Sequence record: NC_091964.1
DNA length: 64,000 nt
Direction: 5' to 3' (one strand)
Position 1 is the first letter of the stretch, and each line of letters starts with the position of its first letter. Of this stretch, positions 14-35,193 are shown in pieces. The position numbers and the translations under genes are program-made. The notes under the pieces were generated by a model that worked only from the letters and a program-made list of their open reading frames with translations, ran no database searches and was not told the DNA's origin.

Positions 14-874
14 ATGGACGGAGAATTTATCATGCACCATAAAATCCTTGATGCACTTGCGAATATTACCACTCCAGAACGTATGGTCATATATAAAGAA
101 TCAGTGAGTATTTTATTACTCAAAGACCTTTCGATCTACGATCTGATTTTCGACAATTTCCACGACAGTATGTTTGAATCCGATACTGTCTCTAACCTGG
201 CTGATTTCGACAACCTTTTAATTGGAAACCTGCGGGGTACAATTGAAGAGTTCGGTATCTATCTGGCGATGGATGTGGTCGATGCTCGTTCAGTTGAGCC
301 GATGACGTATTTGGCTAAGATGCTGTACGACTACGATCGATACGATGATCAGAACGAGCTGCTGTTAATGCTCGAGCAGGAAGTTCCTGCAACCGAGCTC
401 ATCGGCGAGATGGTAGCATCTATTACGTCGTATAATAAAGTAGAGGCCGTCATGGAGATTATCTCTGATGTATCTACTGCTATTATTAAGAAGATGCGAC
501 TGACCAGTCAGGAAACCATCAAAGCAATGGAGCTGGAACCGACGTACAGTCAAGAAGAGCTTGAGCGTATTGCGTACCTTGCCAAGCTTTCTGATAAGTT
601 CCAAACACGAGCTGCTTATGACATGCTGGCTCAGGGTTGGAAGTTTGGTGACGATCTCGGTAAGTACGCCTTAGCGTTGGTTCCGGCGGATGAGGTCAAA
701 GAACCTAGCCATGTTGCTGCTCTGTTATGTTTGGCTGCTGTTATGGCCAACACGCCGATTAAAAAGATCAAAGAAGTCGTAGGTGAGTACGTACAATCTC
801 GCTTTGACGACAAAGCTGATCTCATGATGGGGATCGGTCGTGCCTTAAACCGAATTGACCTTGAGGTAGTATAA
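14..874 (+). CDS. Hypothetical protein, 286 aa, upstream of the vRNAP beta-prime C gene
   Basis: Long ORF, TATG at 7-10 just upstream, stop overlaps next start (TAATG). No motif recognised. Confidence 0.75.
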   Translation: MDGEFIMHHKILDALANITTPERMVIYKESVSILLLKDLSIYDLIFDNFHDSMFESDTVSNLADFDNLLIGNLRGTIEEFGIYLAMDVVDARSVEPMTYLAKMLYDYDRYDDQNELLLMLEQEVPATELIGEMVASITSYNKVEAVMEIISDVSTAIIKKMRLTSQETIKAMELEPTYSQEELERIAYLAKLSDKFQTRAAYDMLAQGWKFGDDLGKYALALVPADEVKEPSHVAALLCLAAVMANTPIKKIKEVVGEYVQSRFDDKADLMMGIGRALNRIDLEVV

Positions 875-1290
875 TGAGCATTACCAAAAGAATATTAGGT
901 GGATCGAAAGGCGATACGTTTATCTATAAAGAAAAAGAGTACGCTATCAGCGACTTGGTTAAGTTCTGCAAAGATAAACCTGTTGAGGAAGTTAAGTTAT
1001 CCACATTTCGTCAGTTAGGTAAAGGCGGGACGATGGATGATCTCTGGACTATCCTTAATGACTCTACGGGTAAGGTTACTTCCCCTACCGTTATAGAGAT
1101 CGCGCGTCAGGTGAAGCGTGTCAAAGATGCAGACACCACCAAACCCATTATCGTTCTTAAAGAGAATGGTAAGATGCGCGTACTGGACGGAATCCATCGA
1201 CTGGCTAAAGCCTACATGGATAAAAAGAAAACTATCCCGACTATCTACTTAACGCCTGAAGACATGGTCGAATTTACAACGGGGTCTTAA
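874..1290 (+). CDS. Small ParB/Srx-fold (ParB N-terminal-like) protein
   Basis: KPIIVLKENGKMRVLDGIHRLAKAY matches the PIIV...DGxHR core of ParB/sulfiredoxin domains. Confidence 0.75.
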   Translation: MSITKRILGGSKGDTFIYKEKEYAISDLVKFCKDKPVEEVKLSTFRQLGKGGTMDDLWTILNDSTGKVTSPTVIEIARQVKRVKDADTTKPIIVLKENGKMRVLDGIHRLAKAYMDKKKTIPTIYLTPEDMVEFTTGS

Positions 1291-2658
1291 ATGGATCGTA
1301 TTCAATATCTTAAACATGCAGTCAAGGCAGGAGCTTGCTATTACAAGACCTGGCTTATTGACTCTATGGGGATCGTGGACTTACCGCCTAAACCTGAAAC
1401 GGTAGATGCAACGATTAACCCGTCACCTGGTCTGCGCAAAGACGAGCCGCCGCGTTATCCTCACGAAGAGCATCCGTACCAGTTATTCGATTTCAAAGGT
1501 ACGCCTGTATTCCTTAACCCTACGACGAATGAGTGGGAGCCTGTAGATGGCTACAAGAAAGGCGCGCCTTTCTTCCGCTTCAAGGAAGAGATTAATCTGG
1601 AACCGGGTGATATTGCGAACGTCAAAGAACCCATCACTACCTGGATCGGAAACCTCCTCGTCAACCAATGCGTTCTCTGTTACCCCTTCGGCGACCTGAT
1701 ACCTTTCCAGATGGGACAGTTCTCCATCAAGAAAGTAGAAGCAATTATCGCGTCCAAGTTAGAATCTCTGCCAGACGTAGGTCAGGCTCGTGACGAGACT
1801 AAGATCTACGTCGATACGTTAGAGAATTATTACTACGATGCTGCATATTCGCTTTCTGGATGGACGCAGCTCGCTGTACCGGCCGCATCACCTCATACGC
1901 TAATCACGGATCCTAAAATCCGTAAACGTCGTATAGAGCTTCTGAACGAGTATAAGGACCAACTCGACGATCCGGCTATTATTGCTAAGATCATGCAAGA
2001 GCTCATCGACATGGACGTAGCTTTCCAGGCAGACGATCCAGAAGGCGGTTATCTCCAGCCAGGTAAGTCTTTCGACGTAGTCCGTGCAAAAGCTTTCTTG
2101 ATGTACGGTATCGAACGCGACTTCAACGATCCGAACAAGATCGTGCTTATTGACAGACCTCTGTCGGAAGGCTGGGATATTACCAAGTTACCTTACATGG
2201 TCAATGCTTTGATCGAAGGTTCGTTCTACCGTGGTGCAATGACAGCCCTCGGTGGAGAAGGAGCTAAGTTCATTCAACGCTTCTTCTTGAACACAAACAT
2301 CATCGAAGAAGACTGTGGGGTTAAGTACGGTAAAACCACAATCCTGAAACCGAAGGATAAGGATGACTATCTCGGCGCATCTGTAGTAGGTCCCGGTGGA
2401 TCGCGCATCGAACTCACTGAAGAGAACTACGCGTCGTATGCAGGTAAAATACTACAAGTCTTCTCTCCGCAGTACTGCAAGACAAAACGCCCTAACTTCT
2501 GTGTGAAGTGTTTGGGTGCGCGCTATCGCGGTAAACCTAATTCACCTGCCGCCTTGGCGTCAGTAATCGGCTCGGTGTTGATGTATATCTTCATGAAGAA
2601 AATGCACGGCGTAGCACTGAAGACTAAGAAGTGGGACTGGCGGGCAACTGCTGAGTGA
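1291..2658 (+). CDS. Virion RNA polymerase beta-prime subunit, C-terminal part (phiKZ gp80-like)
   Basis: RpoC-like motifs NIIEEDCG (cf. VTEDDCG), SPQYCKTKRPNFCVKCLG (Zn site) and IGSVLMYIFMKKMH (trigger-loop region); size and synteny with the DNA polymerase fit. Confidence 0.88.
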   Translation: MDRIQYLKHAVKAGACYYKTWLIDSMGIVDLPPKPETVDATINPSPGLRKDEPPRYPHEEHPYQLFDFKGTPVFLNPTTNEWEPVDGYKKGAPFFRFKEEINLEPGDIANVKEPITTWIGNLLVNQCVLCYPFGDLIPFQMGQFSIKKVEAIIASKLESLPDVGQARDETKIYVDTLENYYYDAAYSLSGWTQLAVPAASPHTLITDPKIRKRRIELLNEYKDQLDDPAIIAKIMQELIDMDVAFQADDPEGGYLQPGKSFDVVRAKAFLMYGIERDFNDPNKIVLIDRPLSEGWDITKLPYMVNALIEGSFYRGAMTALGGEGAKFIQRFFLNTNIIEEDCGVKYGKTTILKPKDKDDYLGASVVGPGGSRIELTEENYASYAGKILQVFSPQYCKTKRPNFCVKCLGARYRGKPNSPAALASVIGSVLMYIFMKKMHGVALKTKKWDWRATAE

Positions 2659-2665
2659 GGTGAAG

Positions 2666-3310
2666 ATGTTAGAGACAATCCTCTCTAGAAAAGCAGGGGG
2701 AGGCATTGGTACAAATACTCTGTTACTGATGCAGGCTGATAAAGGGTTCACTGATATAGCTAACCCATCTCGTCTCGTACAGAAGTACTCTAACCCGGTG
2801 ATAGGATCAACTCAGTCTAAGTTTAGTAACGTTTCCTTCGACTGTACTGGCGGTGGTATCTTAATCCCTGCCGCCAGTAAGAAGGATCTCGTCTTCTCGG
2901 CTGATAAACCTTACACGATTGAGTTTTGGGCCTATAACACATCGCTCAATAATGTTTGGTGGCTTTACTCGGGACGTAGTTCTCAGAGTGACCTTAAGGT
3001 CTATAGCGGTAACGTATATTTACAGGATGAGGGCGGTAGTCTCTACGCTCCTTCCTCGTTCATGACTACCGGTAAGTGGGCACACGTCGCGATAGTTGGG
3101 ACTGCCAACGATAAAGTGAGATTGTTCGTAGATGGGAAAATCATAGGGGTTCCTTTCCTCCCTAAAGGTTGGGGCCATGTTAACCAACAAATGGTTATCG
3201 GCTCAGGTGAAATTAACTCCTGGGCGCACCTTGACCAAATCCGCATCTCCAACATAGCTCGTTATACTGCGGCTTTTACTCCCCCAACTGATCCTTTTGT
3301 AATAGATTAA
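2666..3310 (+). CDS. LamG/concanavalin A-like lectin-domain protein, MLE-tag family
   Basis: TLLLMQAD, YTIEFW, WAHVAIV, RLFVDG, LDQIRISNIARYTAAFTPPTDPF are typical LamG motifs; RBS GAGGTG before ATG 2666 (ORF track starts at 2660). Confidence 0.85.
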   Translation: MLETILSRKAGGGIGTNTLLLMQADKGFTDIANPSRLVQKYSNPVIGSTQSKFSNVSFDCTGGGILIPAASKKDLVFSADKPYTIEFWAYNTSLNNVWWLYSGRSSQSDLKVYSGNVYLQDEGGSLYAPSSFMTTGKWAHVAIVGTANDKVRLFVDGKIIGVPFLPKGWGHVNQQMVIGSGEINSWAHLDQIRISNIARYTAAFTPPTDPFVID

Positions 3311-5756: not shown

Positions 5757-6239
5757 TTAAATAAACTTACCATCCCAGGGAATCGGGGCAGACATCCCCA
5801 GAGGATTGACTCGCATTACTTTACCAACTGTACTATCGAAATAGAGGAAGTCCAAAGCCTGTGATCCATTGAAGGTTCCGTAGGTAGAAGACGTATAGCC
5901 ATTTCGACTGAGGGATACGTACGAGGGATTAGAACCCAAATAGTGTAGCTTAAAAACGACGATCCTTTTACCAGTGATGTTCTCGTTAAGCAAATCAATC
6001 GTAGGGAAGCAGTGTTGGGCTACCCTACCCATAGGAGAGTCATAGGTAAACCTATTCCCCCAAGGAGTGCCCCACATAGTTCCAGAAGGTGAAGCCATTG
6101 TGGTTCTACAATAACCCTCCGTTCCGTTCGGTCTTACAGTAGGTCCAATATCCGTAAAACCCGAGACAGCTTTAACGAAAGAACCGTAATCAACATTACC
6201 TGCAATTAGGTTCTTCCCTGACAGTAGTGTCTCTAACAT
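5757..6239 (-). CDS. Hypothetical protein, 160 aa, MLE-tag family
   Basis: Starts MLETLLSGK after RBS GGAGG; Gly/Tyr/Thr-rich. Confidence 0.75.
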   Translation of the reverse strand: MLETLLSGKNLIAGNVDYGSFVKAVSGFTDIGPTVRPNGTEGYCRTTMASPSGTMWGTPWGNRFTYDSPMGRVAQHCFPTIDLLNENITGKRIVVFKLHYLGSNPSYVSLSRNGYTSSTYGTFNGSQALDFLYFDSTVGKVMRVNPLGMSAPIPWDGKFI

Positions 6240-19783: not shown

Positions 19784-21193
19784 ATGAGCGTTACTAAACG
19801 TGTATTGGGCCGTGCGGCAGCTCCTGTCCGCAACGTCTCTCTTGAGAACTATGAAGATGGCATTTCGCCGGAAGATATGGCTCAGGCTCAACAGCTTCAG
19901 ATCGAACAGAACGAAGCACTGGAAGAACTGGAGCAGATCGATAGCGCCCTGATGGCAGACAATGCCGAAGGCGAAGTGCTGTCTGAAGCGGTTGGTTCTT
20001 ATCCGAAAGTTGTTGAGATGATCGAACGCGACATCGAAGACAACGGCGGTATCTCCACCGAGTCTGCGAAGTATGTTAACTTCATCCTGGAACAAGCCGG
20101 TATCGCTGGCGTAGTAAGCGTGTCTGTCGAAAACATCGGCGACAACGCCCGCCGCCTGAACGAAACTCGCGTTTCGCTGGAAGGCCTGAAAGAAACTCTG
20201 CGCGCCTGGTGGGATAACCTGCTGGAATGGTTCCGCAAAATGCGTGAGAGCCTGAAAAAGTGGTGGATCAAATCTTTCTCCAGCGCCGCGACTCTGAAGT
20301 CTCGTGCTGCTAACATCGCTGATCGTGCGAAGAAAGTAACGACCTCCAACCCGAAAGAGAAAAAGCTGAGCTTCAACAACCTTCAGTCTACTCTCTTTGT
20401 GCAGGGTAAATTCCCTGGCCAGCAGCTGCCTGCGGCGCTGAAAACCATGTCTGATGTCGGCTCGTCCCTGTTCGGTGACTGGCAGGCGGAAGGTATCAAG
20501 TCTGCCGAAGGCATTCTGGACGTTGTTGGTTCTGCCAACATGGACGAGAACGGTATCGAAGCATTCGCGACCGCTCTTCAGGCCAAGATCCAGGAAAGCG
20601 TAAGCTTCAAACCGGCCGGTTTCACCAACGTAAGCGGCGGGGATATCCCGGACGACTACGCTCAGAACAACGACAGCCGTTATACGGTTAGCCGTACTCC
20701 TGAGCTGCCGGGTCAGCGTGCGATCTACCTGAAACAGCTGACTGGTAACATGAACCAGGGTGGCGGTGCTGAAGGCGGTATCGGTAAACTGACCAACAGC
20801 GTTGACTGGCTGACGAACCGTGTGTTCAAGCTGGACAACTTCACGAAGAAAGCGAAAGAAGATTCTGATACTCAGATCGATACCCTGACGCCGACTTCTA
20901 TCATCGAAATCTGCGGTGAAATTGAAACCTTCGCGACCATCGTCGAAAACTACCAGCGCAACTTCAAAGCGCAGGAGAAAGCGAACGAAGACATCGCCAA
21001 GTTCAAGAAAATCGCTGACCAGGTGCCGGACGATAACAACCGCGACGTTGTTACTGCTCAGAACCTCGTTAAGAAGATTCCGAAGGCGCTGAACGAAATG
21101 ATCAACGAGCCGGTAACCCAGTTCGGTAGTCACTTCTTCAAAGTTTCTCAGTCCGCGCTGCGCGTCTGCGAACGTTCCCTGGCCCAGTACTAA
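19784..21193 (+). CDS. Inner-body/head ejection protein, paralog 1 (phiKZ gp93-family-like)
   Basis: Acidic propeptide with VSLE, ISTE, VSVE, VSLE sites, then EGLKETLRAWW...; very strong codon bias. Confidence 0.8.
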   Translation: MSVTKRVLGRAAAPVRNVSLENYEDGISPEDMAQAQQLQIEQNEALEELEQIDSALMADNAEGEVLSEAVGSYPKVVEMIERDIEDNGGISTESAKYVNFILEQAGIAGVVSVSVENIGDNARRLNETRVSLEGLKETLRAWWDNLLEWFRKMRESLKKWWIKSFSSAATLKSRAANIADRAKKVTTSNPKEKKLSFNNLQSTLFVQGKFPGQQLPAALKTMSDVGSSLFGDWQAEGIKSAEGILDVVGSANMDENGIEAFATALQAKIQESVSFKPAGFTNVSGGDIPDDYAQNNDSRYTVSRTPELPGQRAIYLKQLTGNMNQGGGAEGGIGKLTNSVDWLTNRVFKLDNFTKKAKEDSDTQIDTLTPTSIIEICGEIETFATIVENYQRNFKAQEKANEDIAKFKKIADQVPDDNNRDVVTAQNLVKKIPKALNEMINEPVTQFGSHFFKVSQSALRVCERSLAQY

Positions 21194-21281: not shown

Positions 21282-22613
21282 ATGAGTATCACTCGTCGTG
21301 TACTTGGTACTAACGTTTCCGCCCCTTCTTTCGAAGCGATGGACGTTTCCCTGGAAGAAGAAGTAATCGCAGCTGGCGAAGCGCAAGATGAGCTGAACAA
21401 CGCGGAAGCGGAGTCTGGCGAAATTGAGCGTCTGCAAGACGTTGCTGATCAGACTGCGCAGTCTGTCGATTATATCGAAACCCAGATCAACTCCCCGGAA
21501 AACAGCGAAGGCGCAACTCAGAACGAAGTTGCTCTGGCTGAGCAGGTTGCTAACCTGGCCACCGTCGGCACCGGCGAAGACGCTGACACTGTCATGCCGT
21601 CTTCTGAATCTTTCGTTGGCTCGCAGATCTCCTGTGAAGGCCTGAAAGAAACCATCCGTGGTATCATCCGCGCCGTTATCGACGCGATCAAAAAGCTGTG
21701 GGTCCGCCTGAAAAAATTCTGGCGTTCTACCATGAGCCGTCTGAGCTCCCTGAAAAAATCTGCTCAGGAACTTAAAGAGCGCGCCAACAAAACCACCGGC
21801 ACCGCGAAAGAGAAGAAAATCAAAGTCTCTGGTAGCATCGCTGGCCTGCTGGCCGTTGACGGTTCCGTGCAGAAAGAGTACGGTCAGATCACCTCTGGTC
21901 TGAAAGACTTCGATAAGCGTATCACCGAAGCTGGTCAGTGGTCTGCTAAGATCGCAGAAGTGGGCGAAGGCATTGCCGACGCTATCAGCGATCTGGACGC
22001 GTCCAAAGCTGCTGCTGAAGAAGCTGCGTTCACCGGTAAGTTCATCTCCAAAGTCGCTGGTCTGAAAGGCGTCTTCGGTGGCATGACCAAAACTACCGAT
22101 AAGCGTTTCGCTGACGACAAAGTCGAAGTCTCTTCTACCAAAACCCTGCTGGGTGAGAAGAAACTGTTCAGCCGTGCTCGCTCTGGTGGTTCCGACAAAG
22201 CGTCTAACTCTCGTCAGATCTCTTCTTCCCGCGTATGGCTGGATGCGTCTTCTGACAAAGTGAAAGATCACAGCGAAACCGAAATCAGCACCATCAGCCC
22301 GTCCAACGTGGCAGATCTGGCTGACGACGTAATCAACCTGTGCGACGCGATGGCGTACTACGGCGAAGGCAAAGGCCTGGATAAAGTCGAAAAAGCTTCT
22401 GGTAAAGTTGAGAAGGCGCTGGAGAAACTGAACCGCGCTAACGATACCGACGAAGCGAAAGGCGAAGACGCTGCTGCGCTGCGCCGCATGGTTGCTCTGG
22501 GCCACGCGTTCAGCGACTGGGCTCGTAACCCGACTGCATCCCTGGTTAACCACGTCTGCACCGTTAGCCGTGCTGTCCTGACCGTTGGTACTAAGTCTCT
22601 GGCTCAGTTCTAA
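21282..22613 (+). CDS. Inner-body/head ejection protein, paralog 2
   Basis: PSFE, VSLE, PSSE, ISCE sites then EGLKETIRG...; aligns by eye with paralog 1 (KEKKLSF vs KEKKIKV; C-terminal KSLAQF vs RSLAQY). Confidence 0.8.
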   Translation: MSITRRVLGTNVSAPSFEAMDVSLEEEVIAAGEAQDELNNAEAESGEIERLQDVADQTAQSVDYIETQINSPENSEGATQNEVALAEQVANLATVGTGEDADTVMPSSESFVGSQISCEGLKETIRGIIRAVIDAIKKLWVRLKKFWRSTMSRLSSLKKSAQELKERANKTTGTAKEKKIKVSGSIAGLLAVDGSVQKEYGQITSGLKDFDKRITEAGQWSAKIAEVGEGIADAISDLDASKAAAEEAAFTGKFISKVAGLKGVFGGMTKTTDKRFADDKVEVSSTKTLLGEKKLFSRARSGGSDKASNSRQISSSRVWLDASSDKVKDHSETEISTISPSNVADLADDVINLCDAMAYYGEGKGLDKVEKASGKVEKALEKLNRANDTDEAKGEDAAALRRMVALGHAFSDWARNPTASLVNHVCTVSRAVLTVGTKSLAQF

Positions 22614-34530: not shown

Positions 34531-35193
34531 ATGCTTGAGAGTATGTTAGCTGGAAAGCAGGTCGATAAGAATGTCCTTATCGATATTGATTTCTCCAGAC
34601 AAGATATCGGCGATACCTTCATGACAGATCTTGCAGGTAACCAGTGGGACCTTGTAGGAAATGATCCGGACTGTAAAGTAGTCTCGGATAGTGTGAAAGG
34701 TAAAGCATTCAGATTTAAGGGAACAACTTATTTTAGGAGTCCCTTGGTTAGCAGGCTGCTACTTGCTAACGTTAGCTTCTCATTAGAGTTAGGCATTCAC
34801 TCAGATGCATCGGCCTCTGGTGTTATTCTAGGGACAGGTAACTATCCTTCTTCCGGGGGCATCTTAGGCGGGTTTAACTTATCTACAGGTCAATACCCTG
34901 CCACCTACATTCAAATGTTCATGACTAACTCTAGCGGTGTTTATCAACGCTGTTTACCAGCTAACACTGCATGGGCCAATACGTGGGACGACATCATCTT
35001 TACTCGTCGACGTAACACCAGTGTATTTGGGCAGGTTACTCGTAACGGTGTTATTACCGGAACTAACTCCGTAGGGGATAATCCATTCGGTAACGGTAAA
35101 GATTATTTCTGTATTGGGGCTAATGCGCATATACTCGGAACATCTGGATTCAAAGGTTTAATCAGTAGAATCAAACTTAAGTTACTAACTTGA
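34531..35193 (+). CDS. LamG/ConA-like beta-sandwich protein, MLE-tag family
   Basis: RBS GGAGGAGG; starts MLESMLAGK; DLAGNQW, AFRFKG, FSLELGI, FCIG...FKGLISRIKL fit a LamG-like fold. Confidence 0.75.
   Translation: MLESMLAGKQVDKNVLIDIDFSRQDIGDTFMTDLAGNQWDLVGNDPDCKVVSDSVKGKAFRFKGTTYFRSPLVSRLLLANVSFSLELGIHSDASASGVILGTGNYPSSGGILGGFNLSTGQYPATYIQMFMTNSSGVYQRCLPANTAWANTWDDIIFTRRRNTSVFGQVTRNGVITGTNSVGDNPFGNGKDYFCIGANAHILGTSGFKGLISRIKLKLLT

What the first reader, a model, noticed from the sequence alone, without database searches (positions are those of the whole stretch)
874..1290. A ParB-fold protein carries the same N-terminal nonapeptide as the two inner-head paralogs
Seen: the ParB/Srx-fold ORF starts MSITKRILG, and the otherwise unrelated head proteins at 19784 and 21282 start MSVTKRVLG and MSITRRVLG, using different codons. 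Inference: MS[IV]T[KR]R[IV]LG may be a prohead-targeting signal, so this small NTP-binding/nuclease-fold enzyme could be packaged and injected. It sits directly upstream of a virion RNAP subunit. It lacks an obvious S-x-E cleavage site.
Basis: partly seen in the sequence, partly recalled or inferred. Interest (0 to 1): 0.68.

Follow-up and report, generated by a model that had tools for sequence, protein, structure and literature searches.

The report
Shared head-loading tag on ParB-like protein
In the nucleus-forming jumbo phage PCH45, a small ParB/sulfiredoxin-like protein starts with the same short peptide as the two internal head proteins; this peptide is most likely an address tag that loads the protein into the capsid for injection with the DNA, but that has not been shown directly.

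Summary
The window is bases 1-64000 of Serratia phage PCH45.

**Observation: confirmed.**
- gp2 (874-1290) starts MSITKRILG. The PF12699 internal head proteins gp23 and gp24 start MSVTKRVLG and MSITRRVLG. All three use different codons.
- No other ORF in the 212.8-kb genome carries the motif, even in relaxed form (0.13 expected by chance).
- These three pairs are the top 3 of 1.3 million N-terminal comparisons.

**The tag is conserved in both families.**
- It survives in gp23 orthologs down to 48% identity, in all gp24 orthologs found, and in gp2 orthologs only 39-56% identical (for example MLNVTRRVM, MNLTRRIL).
- In the head proteins a protease-type S-x-E site follows the tag. gp2 has no such site.

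**gp2 itself.**
- It belongs to the ParB/Srx superfamily: the profile hits SbnI at E = 5.5e-5, all fold hits are Srx/ParB/Noc, and a DGxHR motif is invariant.
- The tag is predicted to be disordered, outside the fold.

**The same domain is tied to heads in other jumbo phages.**
- RP12/RP31: fused to a virion RNA polymerase subunit.
- RVTF4 and D6: apparently made as a -1 frameshift extension of an internal head protein, followed by an S-x-E site.
- PA5oct: detected in virions by mass spectrometry.

**Verdict.** This is probably a T4-CTS-like capsid-targeting tag co-opted by an accessory cargo enzyme (about 0.6).

The parts
874..1290 (+). gp2 (QFP93211.1), 138 aa: N-terminal tag plus a single ParB/Srx-superfamily domain (phrog_17560)
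   Evidence: ORF and annotation. phrog_17560 E = 1e-16. Profile against PDB hits SbnI at E = 5.5e-5. AF2 model pLDDT 77.6. Fold hits are all Srx/ParB/Noc/SbnI, Z 5.0-5.5.
874..900 (+). Tag codons of gp2 (MSITKRILG). The start codon overlaps the gp1 stop codon (TAATG).
   Evidence: Residues 1-12 are predicted disordered (pLDDT 38). In gp2 orthologs the tag window has the highest similarity of any 9-residue window (0.83 against a mean of 0.64).
1186..1200 (+). D105-G106-I-H108-R109, the invariant DGxHR core motif of the domain
   Evidence: Invariant in 83 homologs and in the 7-phage alignment. It aligns to the DGvHR motif of SbnI.
32..874 (+). gp1 (phrog_5038, function unknown), the upstream member of the tight gp1-gp2-gp3-gp4 block
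   Evidence: In SPLA10 and PhiEaH1 its homolog directly abuts the gp3 homolog with no gp2 between.
1291..2658 (+). gp3, a virion RNA polymerase beta-type subunit. It starts on the base after the gp2 stop codon.
   Evidence: phrog_2962 E = 4.9e-135. Named vRNAP subunit gp3 and detected in virions in preprint 10.64898/2025.12.19.695335.
19784..21193 (+). gp23, internal head protein (PF12699) carrying the tag MSVTKRVLG
   Evidence: PF12699 E = 7e-68. Virion protein per the preprint. Orthologs keep M[SG]VTxR[VI]LG down to 48% identity.
19838..19846 (+). S19-L20-E21 of gp23, a candidate prohead-protease site that ends a 21-residue leader
   Evidence: The position is conserved as S/A-x-E followed by N-[YF]-E-[DE]-G in orthologs, while the linker before it varies.
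21282..22613 (+). gp24, internal head protein paralog (PF12699) carrying the tag MSITRRVLG
   Evidence: PF12699 E = 6.5e-59. The tag MSITRRVL is identical in SPLA10 and in three metagenomic relatives.
21348..21356 (+). S23-L24-E25 of gp24, a candidate prohead-protease site. S16-F17-E18 lies just upstream.

Best explanation
The peptide at residues 2-9 (consensus [IV]-T-[KR]-R-[IV]-L-G) is a capsid-targeting address tag of the PCH45 clade. It docks the two PF12699 internal head proteins into the assembling prohead core. In those two proteins it is probably removed with a 21-25-residue leader by the prohead protease at a conserved S-x-E site.

gp2 is a small accessory ParB/Srx-superfamily protein inserted between gp1 and the virion RNAP subunit gp3. 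It has taken on the same tag on a disordered N-terminus. It would therefore be co-packaged, uncleaved, and ejected into the cell with the DNA and the virion RNAP. There it would act early as a nucleotide-dependent enzyme (NTP-binding, phosphotransfer or nuclease type).

Shown: the tag, its specificity, its conservation, the fold class, and the links between this domain and head contents in other phages.

Inferred: that the tag causes packaging, that gp2 is in virions, that cleavage occurs at S-x-E, and what the enzyme does.
For: 1. Specificity. Only gp2, gp23 and gp24 carry the motif in 212.8 kb. Their pairs rank 1-3 of 1.3 million N-terminal comparisons. In all of IMG/VR the two DNA patterns tried (Ser as AGY; position 5 as AAR or CGN) occur only on the one PCH45-like contig, at the same three genes.

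2. Selection acts on the peptide.
- gp2 orthologs are only 39-56% identical overall but keep [ILV]-T-[KR]-[KR]-[IV]-[LM], with entirely different codons.
- gp23 orthologs keep the tag down to 48% identity while the next ~10 residues vary.
- The gp24 tag is identical in five phages.

3. CTS-like layout. In the head proteins a conserved S/A-x-E follows the tag within 17-26 residues. This matches the S/A-x-E sites (SQE, AXE) reported for phiKZ-group prohead proteases and the 10-20-residue T4 CTS propeptides.

4. gp23, gp24 and gp3 are virion proteins of PCH45 by mass spectrometry. gp2 sits in a tight block with gp3: it overlaps the gp1 stop and is 0 nt from the gp3 start.

5. The tag lies outside the fold (pLDDT 38 for residues 1-10; the fold begins at residue 15).

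6. The same phrog_17560 domain is tied to heads by independent routes.
- RP12 ORF42 is the virion RNAP beta-prime N-region and carries the domain at its C-terminus after A-L-E. Its RP31 ortholog was found in virions.
- In RVTF4 and D6 the domain follows a PF12699 gene that ends in an X_XXA_AAG heptamer plus TAA. The -1 frame is open and reads S-x-E and then the conserved domain start, which has no start codon of its own.
- PA5oct gp140 carries the domain and is annotated as a structural protein by ESI-MS/MS.
Against: - There is no direct evidence that gp2 is in PCH45 virions. The proteome table exists but is not held.
- gp2 has no [SAG]-x-E site, so unlike the head proteins and the T4 CTS cargo it would keep its tag.
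- Only three proteins carry the tag. The vRNAP subunits and other head proteins do not, so it cannot be the general route into the head.
- gp2 tags in the relatives match their own head proteins' tags less closely (MLNVTRRVM against MGVTKRILG) than in PCH45.
- SPLA10 and PhiEaH1 lack gp2 altogether.
- The fold assignment is moderate (Z about 5, Foldseek E about 0.01) and gives no function.
- The receptor for the tag is unknown.
Confidence: 0.6

Rival explanations
1. The shared peptide is a localisation or handling signal used before assembly. Examples are recruitment to the membrane or capsid-assembly site, recruitment to a chaperone, or exclusion from the phage nucleus. gp2 would share the location or handling of the head proteins but would not itself be packaged.
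For: The tag is short, basic and amphipathic, on a disordered N-terminus. gp2 lacks the protease site that the head proteins have. T4 head-protein N-termini are also reported to recruit chaperonins.
Against: The only other carriers are two bona fide internal head proteins. The gp2 domain family is linked to packaged proteins in three other phage lineages.
Confidence: 0.17
2. The shared N-terminus serves expression or stability rather than targeting. It could be a favourable start-of-ORF sequence for late translation, an N-terminal processing signal (Met removal leaving Ser) or a half-life signal that these three genes share.
For: All three PCH45 genes begin ATG AGY RTY ACY. Position 2 is Ser or Gly, both of which allow Met removal.
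Against: - Codons differ widely among orthologs while the residues are kept.
- gp2 orthologs begin ML-N or M-N, not MS.
- Only 3 of 225 annotated genes, and none of the other late virion genes, carry it.
Confidence: 0.1
3. The tag on gp2 is a historical remnant. A 5' gene fragment from a head-protein gene was copied when gp2 was inserted, and the tag now has no function on gp2. Alternatively gp2 is a decoy that competes with the head proteins for their receptor and so regulates loading.
For: gp2 is a lineage-specific insertion between gp1 and gp3. More distant homologs outside the clade start directly at the domain without a tag.
Against: The tag persists in gp2 orthologs down to 39% identity with saturated synonymous change, and it is the most similarity-conserved window of the protein. 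That is not expected for a neutral remnant.
Confidence: 0.08

Closest known systems
T4 capsid targeting sequence (CTS) of internal proteins IPI-III and Alt (Mullaney and Black 1996, as described in PMC5694885)
   Same: A short N-terminal peptide is shared by otherwise unrelated head-internal or ejected proteins. In the head proteins it lies in a 10-25-residue leader that ends at a prohead-protease x-x-E site. It loads enzymes (Alt in T4, gp2 here) beside structural internal proteins.
   Different: There is no sequence relationship: this tag is basic (K/R-R) and hydrophobic. The phage is a phiKZ-like, nucleus-forming type, where the propeptides described so far are mostly over 100 residues. gp2 has no cleavage site, so it would keep the tag. 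Sufficiency for packaging is untested.
phiKZ / SPN3US internal head (ejection) proteins, PF12699, and their propeptides
   Same: gp23 and gp24 are members. S/A-x-E type sites are present. The virion RNAP is co-packaged.
   Different: SPN3US gp50, gp53 and gp54 have 124-127-residue propeptides, and no short consensus targeting peptide is described in the SPN3US papers consulted here (PMC5694885, PMC10052503). Here a 9-residue consensus is defined and is shared with a non-IP protein.
ParB/Srx superfamily: SbnI and SerK serine kinases, sulfiredoxin, ParB/Noc N-terminal CTPase domain
   Same: The predicted fold matches, and the DGxHR core aligns to the DGvHR of SbnI. From general knowledge of these families, a nucleotide-binding site is expected.
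   Different: gp2 is a single 124-residue domain with no HTH, no dimerisation domain and no Pfam ParB_N hit. The fold scores are only moderate. The activity is unknown.
Programmed -1 frameshift fusions in phage structural genes (for example tail assembly chaperones G/GT)
   Same: RVTF4 and D6 have an X_XXA_AAG heptamer at the end of the upstream gene, and the -1 frame continues into a conserved coding segment.
   Different: The upstream gene is an internal head protein and the extension is a cargo enzyme preceded by a protease site. No protein evidence exists. This is a neighbouring observation in other phages, not in PCH45.

Membership tests
T4-type capsid targeting sequence (functional class) | Short N-terminal peptide shared by unrelated head-internal proteins of one phage | tested here: met
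   Three proteins from two unrelated families carry it; it is unique in the genome.
T4-type capsid targeting sequence (functional class) | Tag lies in a short leader that ends at a prohead-protease site and is removed on maturation | tested here: inconclusive
   gp23 has S-L-E at 19-21 and gp24 has S-L-E at 23-25, both conserved in orthologs. gp2 has no [SAG]-x-E. Actual cleavage was not observable here.
T4-type capsid targeting sequence (functional class) | Tag is necessary and sufficient to load a protein into proheads | not testable with these tools
   This needs tag-reporter fusions and virion mass spectrometry.
T4-type capsid targeting sequence (functional class) | Cargo is present in purified virions | tested here: inconclusive
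   gp23, gp24 and gp3 are reported in PCH45 virions. The status of gp2 is in Extended Data Table 3, which is not held.
ParB/Srx superfamily | ParB/Srx alpha-beta fold | tested here: met
   The AF2 model has pLDDT 77.6 and pTM 0.71. All top Foldseek and VIA hits are Srx, ParB, Noc, SbnI, SerK, KorB or Osa, with Z 5.0-5.5 and 72-83 aligned residues. The strength is moderate.
ParB/Srx superfamily | Conserved nucleotide-site core motif after the central strands | tested here: met
   D105, G106, H108 and R109 are invariant in 83 homologs. The profile hits SbnI at E = 5.5e-5 over this region.
Canonical chromosome/plasmid ParB | ParB_N Pfam match, HTH DNA-binding domain and C-terminal dimerisation domain | tested here: not met
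   There is no Pfam hit at E <= 0.1. The protein is 138 aa with a single domain. The best ParB sequence hit has E = 0.13-0.23.
PF12699 phiKZ_IP | Pfam match above the gathering score | tested here: not met
   This row concerns gp2, which has no hit. gp23 and gp24 do match, at 230 and 200 bits against a cut-off of 27.
-1 programmed frameshift (RVTF4 and D6 loci only) | X_XXY_YYZ heptamer in the zero frame, with the -1 frame open into conserved coding sequence | tested here: met
   C_CCA_AAG plus TAA in RVTF4 and G_GGA_AAG plus TAA in D6. The -1 frame reads S-x-E and then a 12-residue domain start (AYSEGPDSTFTH) that is identical in both phages and has no in-frame start codon. Synonymous differences between the two phages are present.
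-1 programmed frameshift (RVTF4 and D6 loci only) | Downstream stimulatory structure and a trans-frame protein product | tested here: inconclusive
   Only a weak shared hairpin is predicted. No proteomic data are available.

The most novel reading that the evidence does not exclude
An 8-9-residue portable address tag loads proteins into the capsids of a chimallivirus lineage. Separately, a mini ParB/Srx enzyme is a recurrent injected cargo of jumbo phages that has reached the head by at least three different genetic routes:
- a borrowed internal-head-protein tag (PCH45 clade);
- a -1 frameshift fusion to an internal head protein with a protease release site (RVTF4, D6);
- fusion to the virion RNA polymerase beta-prime subunit (RP12, RP31).

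This would imply an early, possibly transcription- or defence-related function delivered together with the genome.
Probability: 0.4. Interest if true: 0.8.

Novelty: new variant of a known kind. Interest (0 to 1): 0.62.

Why it matters
Nucleus-forming jumbo phages must protect and express their DNA before any phage protein is made, so the set of injected proteins is central to how they evade host defences. That set cannot yet be predicted from sequence.

- A short, defined targeting tag would allow injected cargo to be predicted in this clade.
- It would give a handle for loading foreign proteins into jumbo-phage capsids. PCH45 now has genetic tools and a virion proteome, so the idea is directly testable.
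- The repeated, independent attachment of the same small ParB/Srx domain to head proteins or to the virion RNA polymerase points to an unrecognised early function worth assaying.

Tried and rejected
- The single-sequence AF2 model of gp2 was unusable (pLDDT 36), so I replaced it with an 83-sequence alignment model.
- Pfam gave nothing for gp2. The word-based homolog search found only a 96% twin.
- A tag-like match in SPLA10 at 204070 (MLLTRRMLG) is a 51-codon ORF, antisense to an annotated gene and closed by a stop before the RNAP gene. The reversed-pattern control also gave one hit, so I rejected it as chance.
- No gp2 homolog was found in SPLA10 or PhiEaH1, even at E <= 10.
- Whole-record search of the Logan contig carrying P0005 was not possible, so I reached its head proteins through a homolog search instead.
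- The contexts of the more distant homologs P0007 and P0008 are 1-1.5-kb contigs and uninformative.
- The PCH45 proteomics table is not held, and gp2 is not mentioned in the preprint's main text.
- No convincing RNA structure lies downstream of the RVTF4 and D6 slippery sites.
- I did not run complex prediction because no receptor for the tag can be named. I did not use the reads tools because they could not show packaging.

Full report
**Identity of the window.** The first 4 kb match Serratia phage PCH45 (MN334766.1, 212,807 bp) at 100% from base 1. The window is therefore bases 1-64000 of this nucleus-forming jumbo phage. Counting the GenBank CDSs in order:
- the flagged ORF 874-1290 is gp2;
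- 1291-2658 is gp3;
- 19784-21193 is gp23;
- 21282-22613 is gp24.

This numbering agrees with a 2025 preprint that calls gp3 a virion RNAP subunit and gp23/gp24 internal head proteins.

**The observation.**
- The three N-termini read MSITKRILG, MSVTKRVLG and MSITRRVLG, and their codons differ.
- gp23 and gp24 are strong PF12699 phiKZ_IP members. gp2 has no Pfam match and belongs to phrog_17560, a family of unknown function.
- I rebuilt the whole genome from the window plus four GenBank pieces and scanned all six frames. Only these three ORFs carry the motif at two or fewer substitutions.
- A relaxed motif that covers all clade variants also hits only these three, against 0.13 hits expected from shuffles.
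- In an unbiased comparison of residues 2-10 at 1624 candidate starts, the three pairs rank 1-3 of 1.3 million.
- In IMG/VR, the two DNA patterns I tried for the tag (Ser as AGY; position 5 as AAR or CGN) occur only on one PCH45-like contig, at the same three genes.

**Conservation in relatives.** A homolog search with gp23 gave a graded series from 97% to 48% identity.
- All keep M-[SG]-V-T-x-R-[VI]-L-G. About ten variable residues follow, and then a conserved S/A-x-E followed by N-[YF]-E-[DE]-G.
- The gp24 orthologs in SPLA10 and in three metagenomic phages start MSITRRVL without exception.
- PhiEaH1 has a related MGRLARTLG...PSVE. The distant Klebsiella phage FBKp24 has MSKIKSVLSRA...ALE.
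- The exhaustive representative search and a follow-up word search found gp2 orthologs that are 39-56% identical to PCH45 gp2. They start MLNVTRRVM, MLNITKKIM, MVSITRRIM and MNLTRRIL.
- These orthologs always lie in the same gp1-gp2-gp3-gp4 block, and two share contigs with tagged head proteins.
- Their tag codons are entirely different, and the tag window has the highest similarity score of any 9-residue window in the gp2 alignment (0.83 against a mean of 0.64).
- Selection therefore acts on the peptide, not on the RNA.

**gp2 is an accessory gene.** In SPLA10 and PhiEaH1 the gp1 and gp3 homologs abut directly, and no gp2 homolog exists anywhere in those records. More distant homologs outside the clade start at the conserved domain without the tag.

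**What gp2 is.**
- A profile built from 83 homologs hits the ParB/Srx-fold kinase SbnI at E = 5.5e-5 over the region that holds an invariant D-G-x-H-R. Sulfiredoxin and ParB come next.
- The alignment-based AlphaFold model has pLDDT 77.6 and pTM 0.71. Residues 1-12 are disordered and the fold begins at residue 15.
- All leading Foldseek and VIA-align matches are ParB/Srx superfamily members, with Z 5.0-5.5.
- The fold class is therefore supported at moderate strength.
- gp2 is not a canonical ParB: it has no HTH domain and no ParB_N match. Its activity is unknown.

**Layout compared with T4.** In both head proteins the tag lies in a short leader that ends in S-L-E (residues 19-21 and 23-25). 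This is the type of site (SQE, AXE) reported for the phiKZ and SPN3US prohead proteases. The leader length matches the 10-20-residue T4 capsid targeting sequences, whereas most propeptides described in giant phages exceed 100 residues. gp2 has no such site, so if it is packaged it would keep its tag.

**Independent links between the domain and phage heads.**
1. *RP12 and RP31.* The domain (phrog_17560, E = 1.4e-17) is the C-terminal extension of ORF42. The first 543 residues of ORF42 match PCH45 92915-94552. The authors list ORF42 as the virion-associated RNAP beta-prime N-region, and its RP31 ortholog ORF39 was detected in virions. A-I-E and A-L-E motifs precede the domain.
2. *RVTF4 and D6.* The small ORF sits inside the internal-head-protein gene cluster.
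   - The upstream PF12699 gene ends with C_CCA_AAG TAA in RVTF4 and G_GGA_AAG TAA in D6.
   - The -1 frame is open from there. It reads V-T-P-S-V-E or V-T-T-S-N-E, and then the conserved domain start.
   - That domain start aligns with the N-termini of the stand-alone homologs, has no in-frame start codon, and shows synonymous differences between the two phages.
   - The simplest reading is a -1 frameshift fusion of the cargo to an internal head protein, released by the prohead protease.
3. *PA5oct.* gp140 carries the domain after a 135-residue extension and an I-S-E motif. It is annotated as a structural protein by ESI-MS/MS, from a 93-protein virion proteome.

In the alignment, the x-x-E of all fused forms falls in the same column, one residue before the domain start. 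The stand-alone forms begin there, and the PCH45 tag occupies exactly that segment.

**Conclusion.**
- The most likely reading (about 0.6) is that the tag is a T4-CTS-like address for the prohead core, and that gp2 borrowed it and is packaged and ejected with the virion RNAP.
- The rivals are a pre-assembly localisation or handling signal (0.17), an expression or stability signal (0.10), and a remnant or decoy (0.08).
- The main gap is direct evidence. The PCH45 virion proteome of 90 proteins exists, but its table is not held and gp2 is not mentioned in the main text.
- Earlier notes of this scan describe similar shared N-terminal tags in other giant phages. They concern other DNA and I did not check them.
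- I file the finding as a new variant of a known kind: CTS-type targeting, here in a phiKZ-like lineage with a new tag and a new cargo.

Noticed in passing
L007:2993-3345 (Pseudomonas phage RVTF4) and L015:3454-3797 (phage D6): A probable -1 programmed frameshift fuses an internal head protein (PF12699) to the small ParB-like domain. The heptamers C_CCA_AAG and G_GGA_AAG lie directly before the TAA stop. The -1 frame reads S-V-E or S-N-E and then the conserved domain start, which has no start codon of its own. The annotated ATG starts appear to truncate the domain.
   Followed up: partly
L009:1177-3171 (Ralstonia phage RP12 ORF42): The virion RNAP beta-prime N-region carries the same ParB-like domain at its C-terminus after A-I-E and A-L-E motifs. 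tblastn found the domain in RP12 and RP31, but no hit to RSL2 or RSF1 was returned. The RP12 paper reports that only RP12 and RP31 replicate in rifampicin and asks which extra factors explain this. This is a lead only.
   Followed up: partly
window 2666-3310 (+), 5757-6239 (-), 34531-35193 (+); also genome 115932-116633 (-): A second recurring N-terminus, MLE[TSA][IML]L[STA]x[KR], occurs on four proteins. One is the Laminin_G_3 protein gp4, which lies next to gp3. The four are at most very distant paralogs (best pairwise E = 0.002). SPLA10 has a similar MMLESML start at the matching position. This could be another docking or targeting peptide.
   Followed up: partly
window 872-876 and 1288-1293: gp1, gp2 and gp3 are packed with a one-base overlap (TAATG) and a zero-base gap. 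In SPLA10 and PhiEaH1 the gp1 and gp3 homologs abut directly, so gp2 is a precise lineage-specific insertion in an otherwise conserved block.
   Followed up: yes
L012:5454-6818 (Erwinia phage PhiEaH1 gp224): The annotated start reads MEITQ-MGRISSGLRG. The internal Met gives an N-terminus like that of the paralog gp226 (MGRLARTLG), so the true start may be five codons downstream.
   Followed up: no
L032:2501-3949 (Klebsiella phage FBKp24 gp014): A distant internal-head-protein homolog starts MSKIKSVLSRA...A-L-E. This is the same style of basic-hydrophobic leader plus an x-x-E site, which suggests the leader type is old in this protein family.
   Followed up: no
L007 and L015, N-termini of the internal head protein genes: The RVTF4 and D6 head proteins share a different leader motif, [LM]-[IL]-A-S-[LM]-E, at residues about 8-35. 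This is a clade-specific counterpart of the PCH45 tag plus S-x-E arrangement.
   Followed up: no
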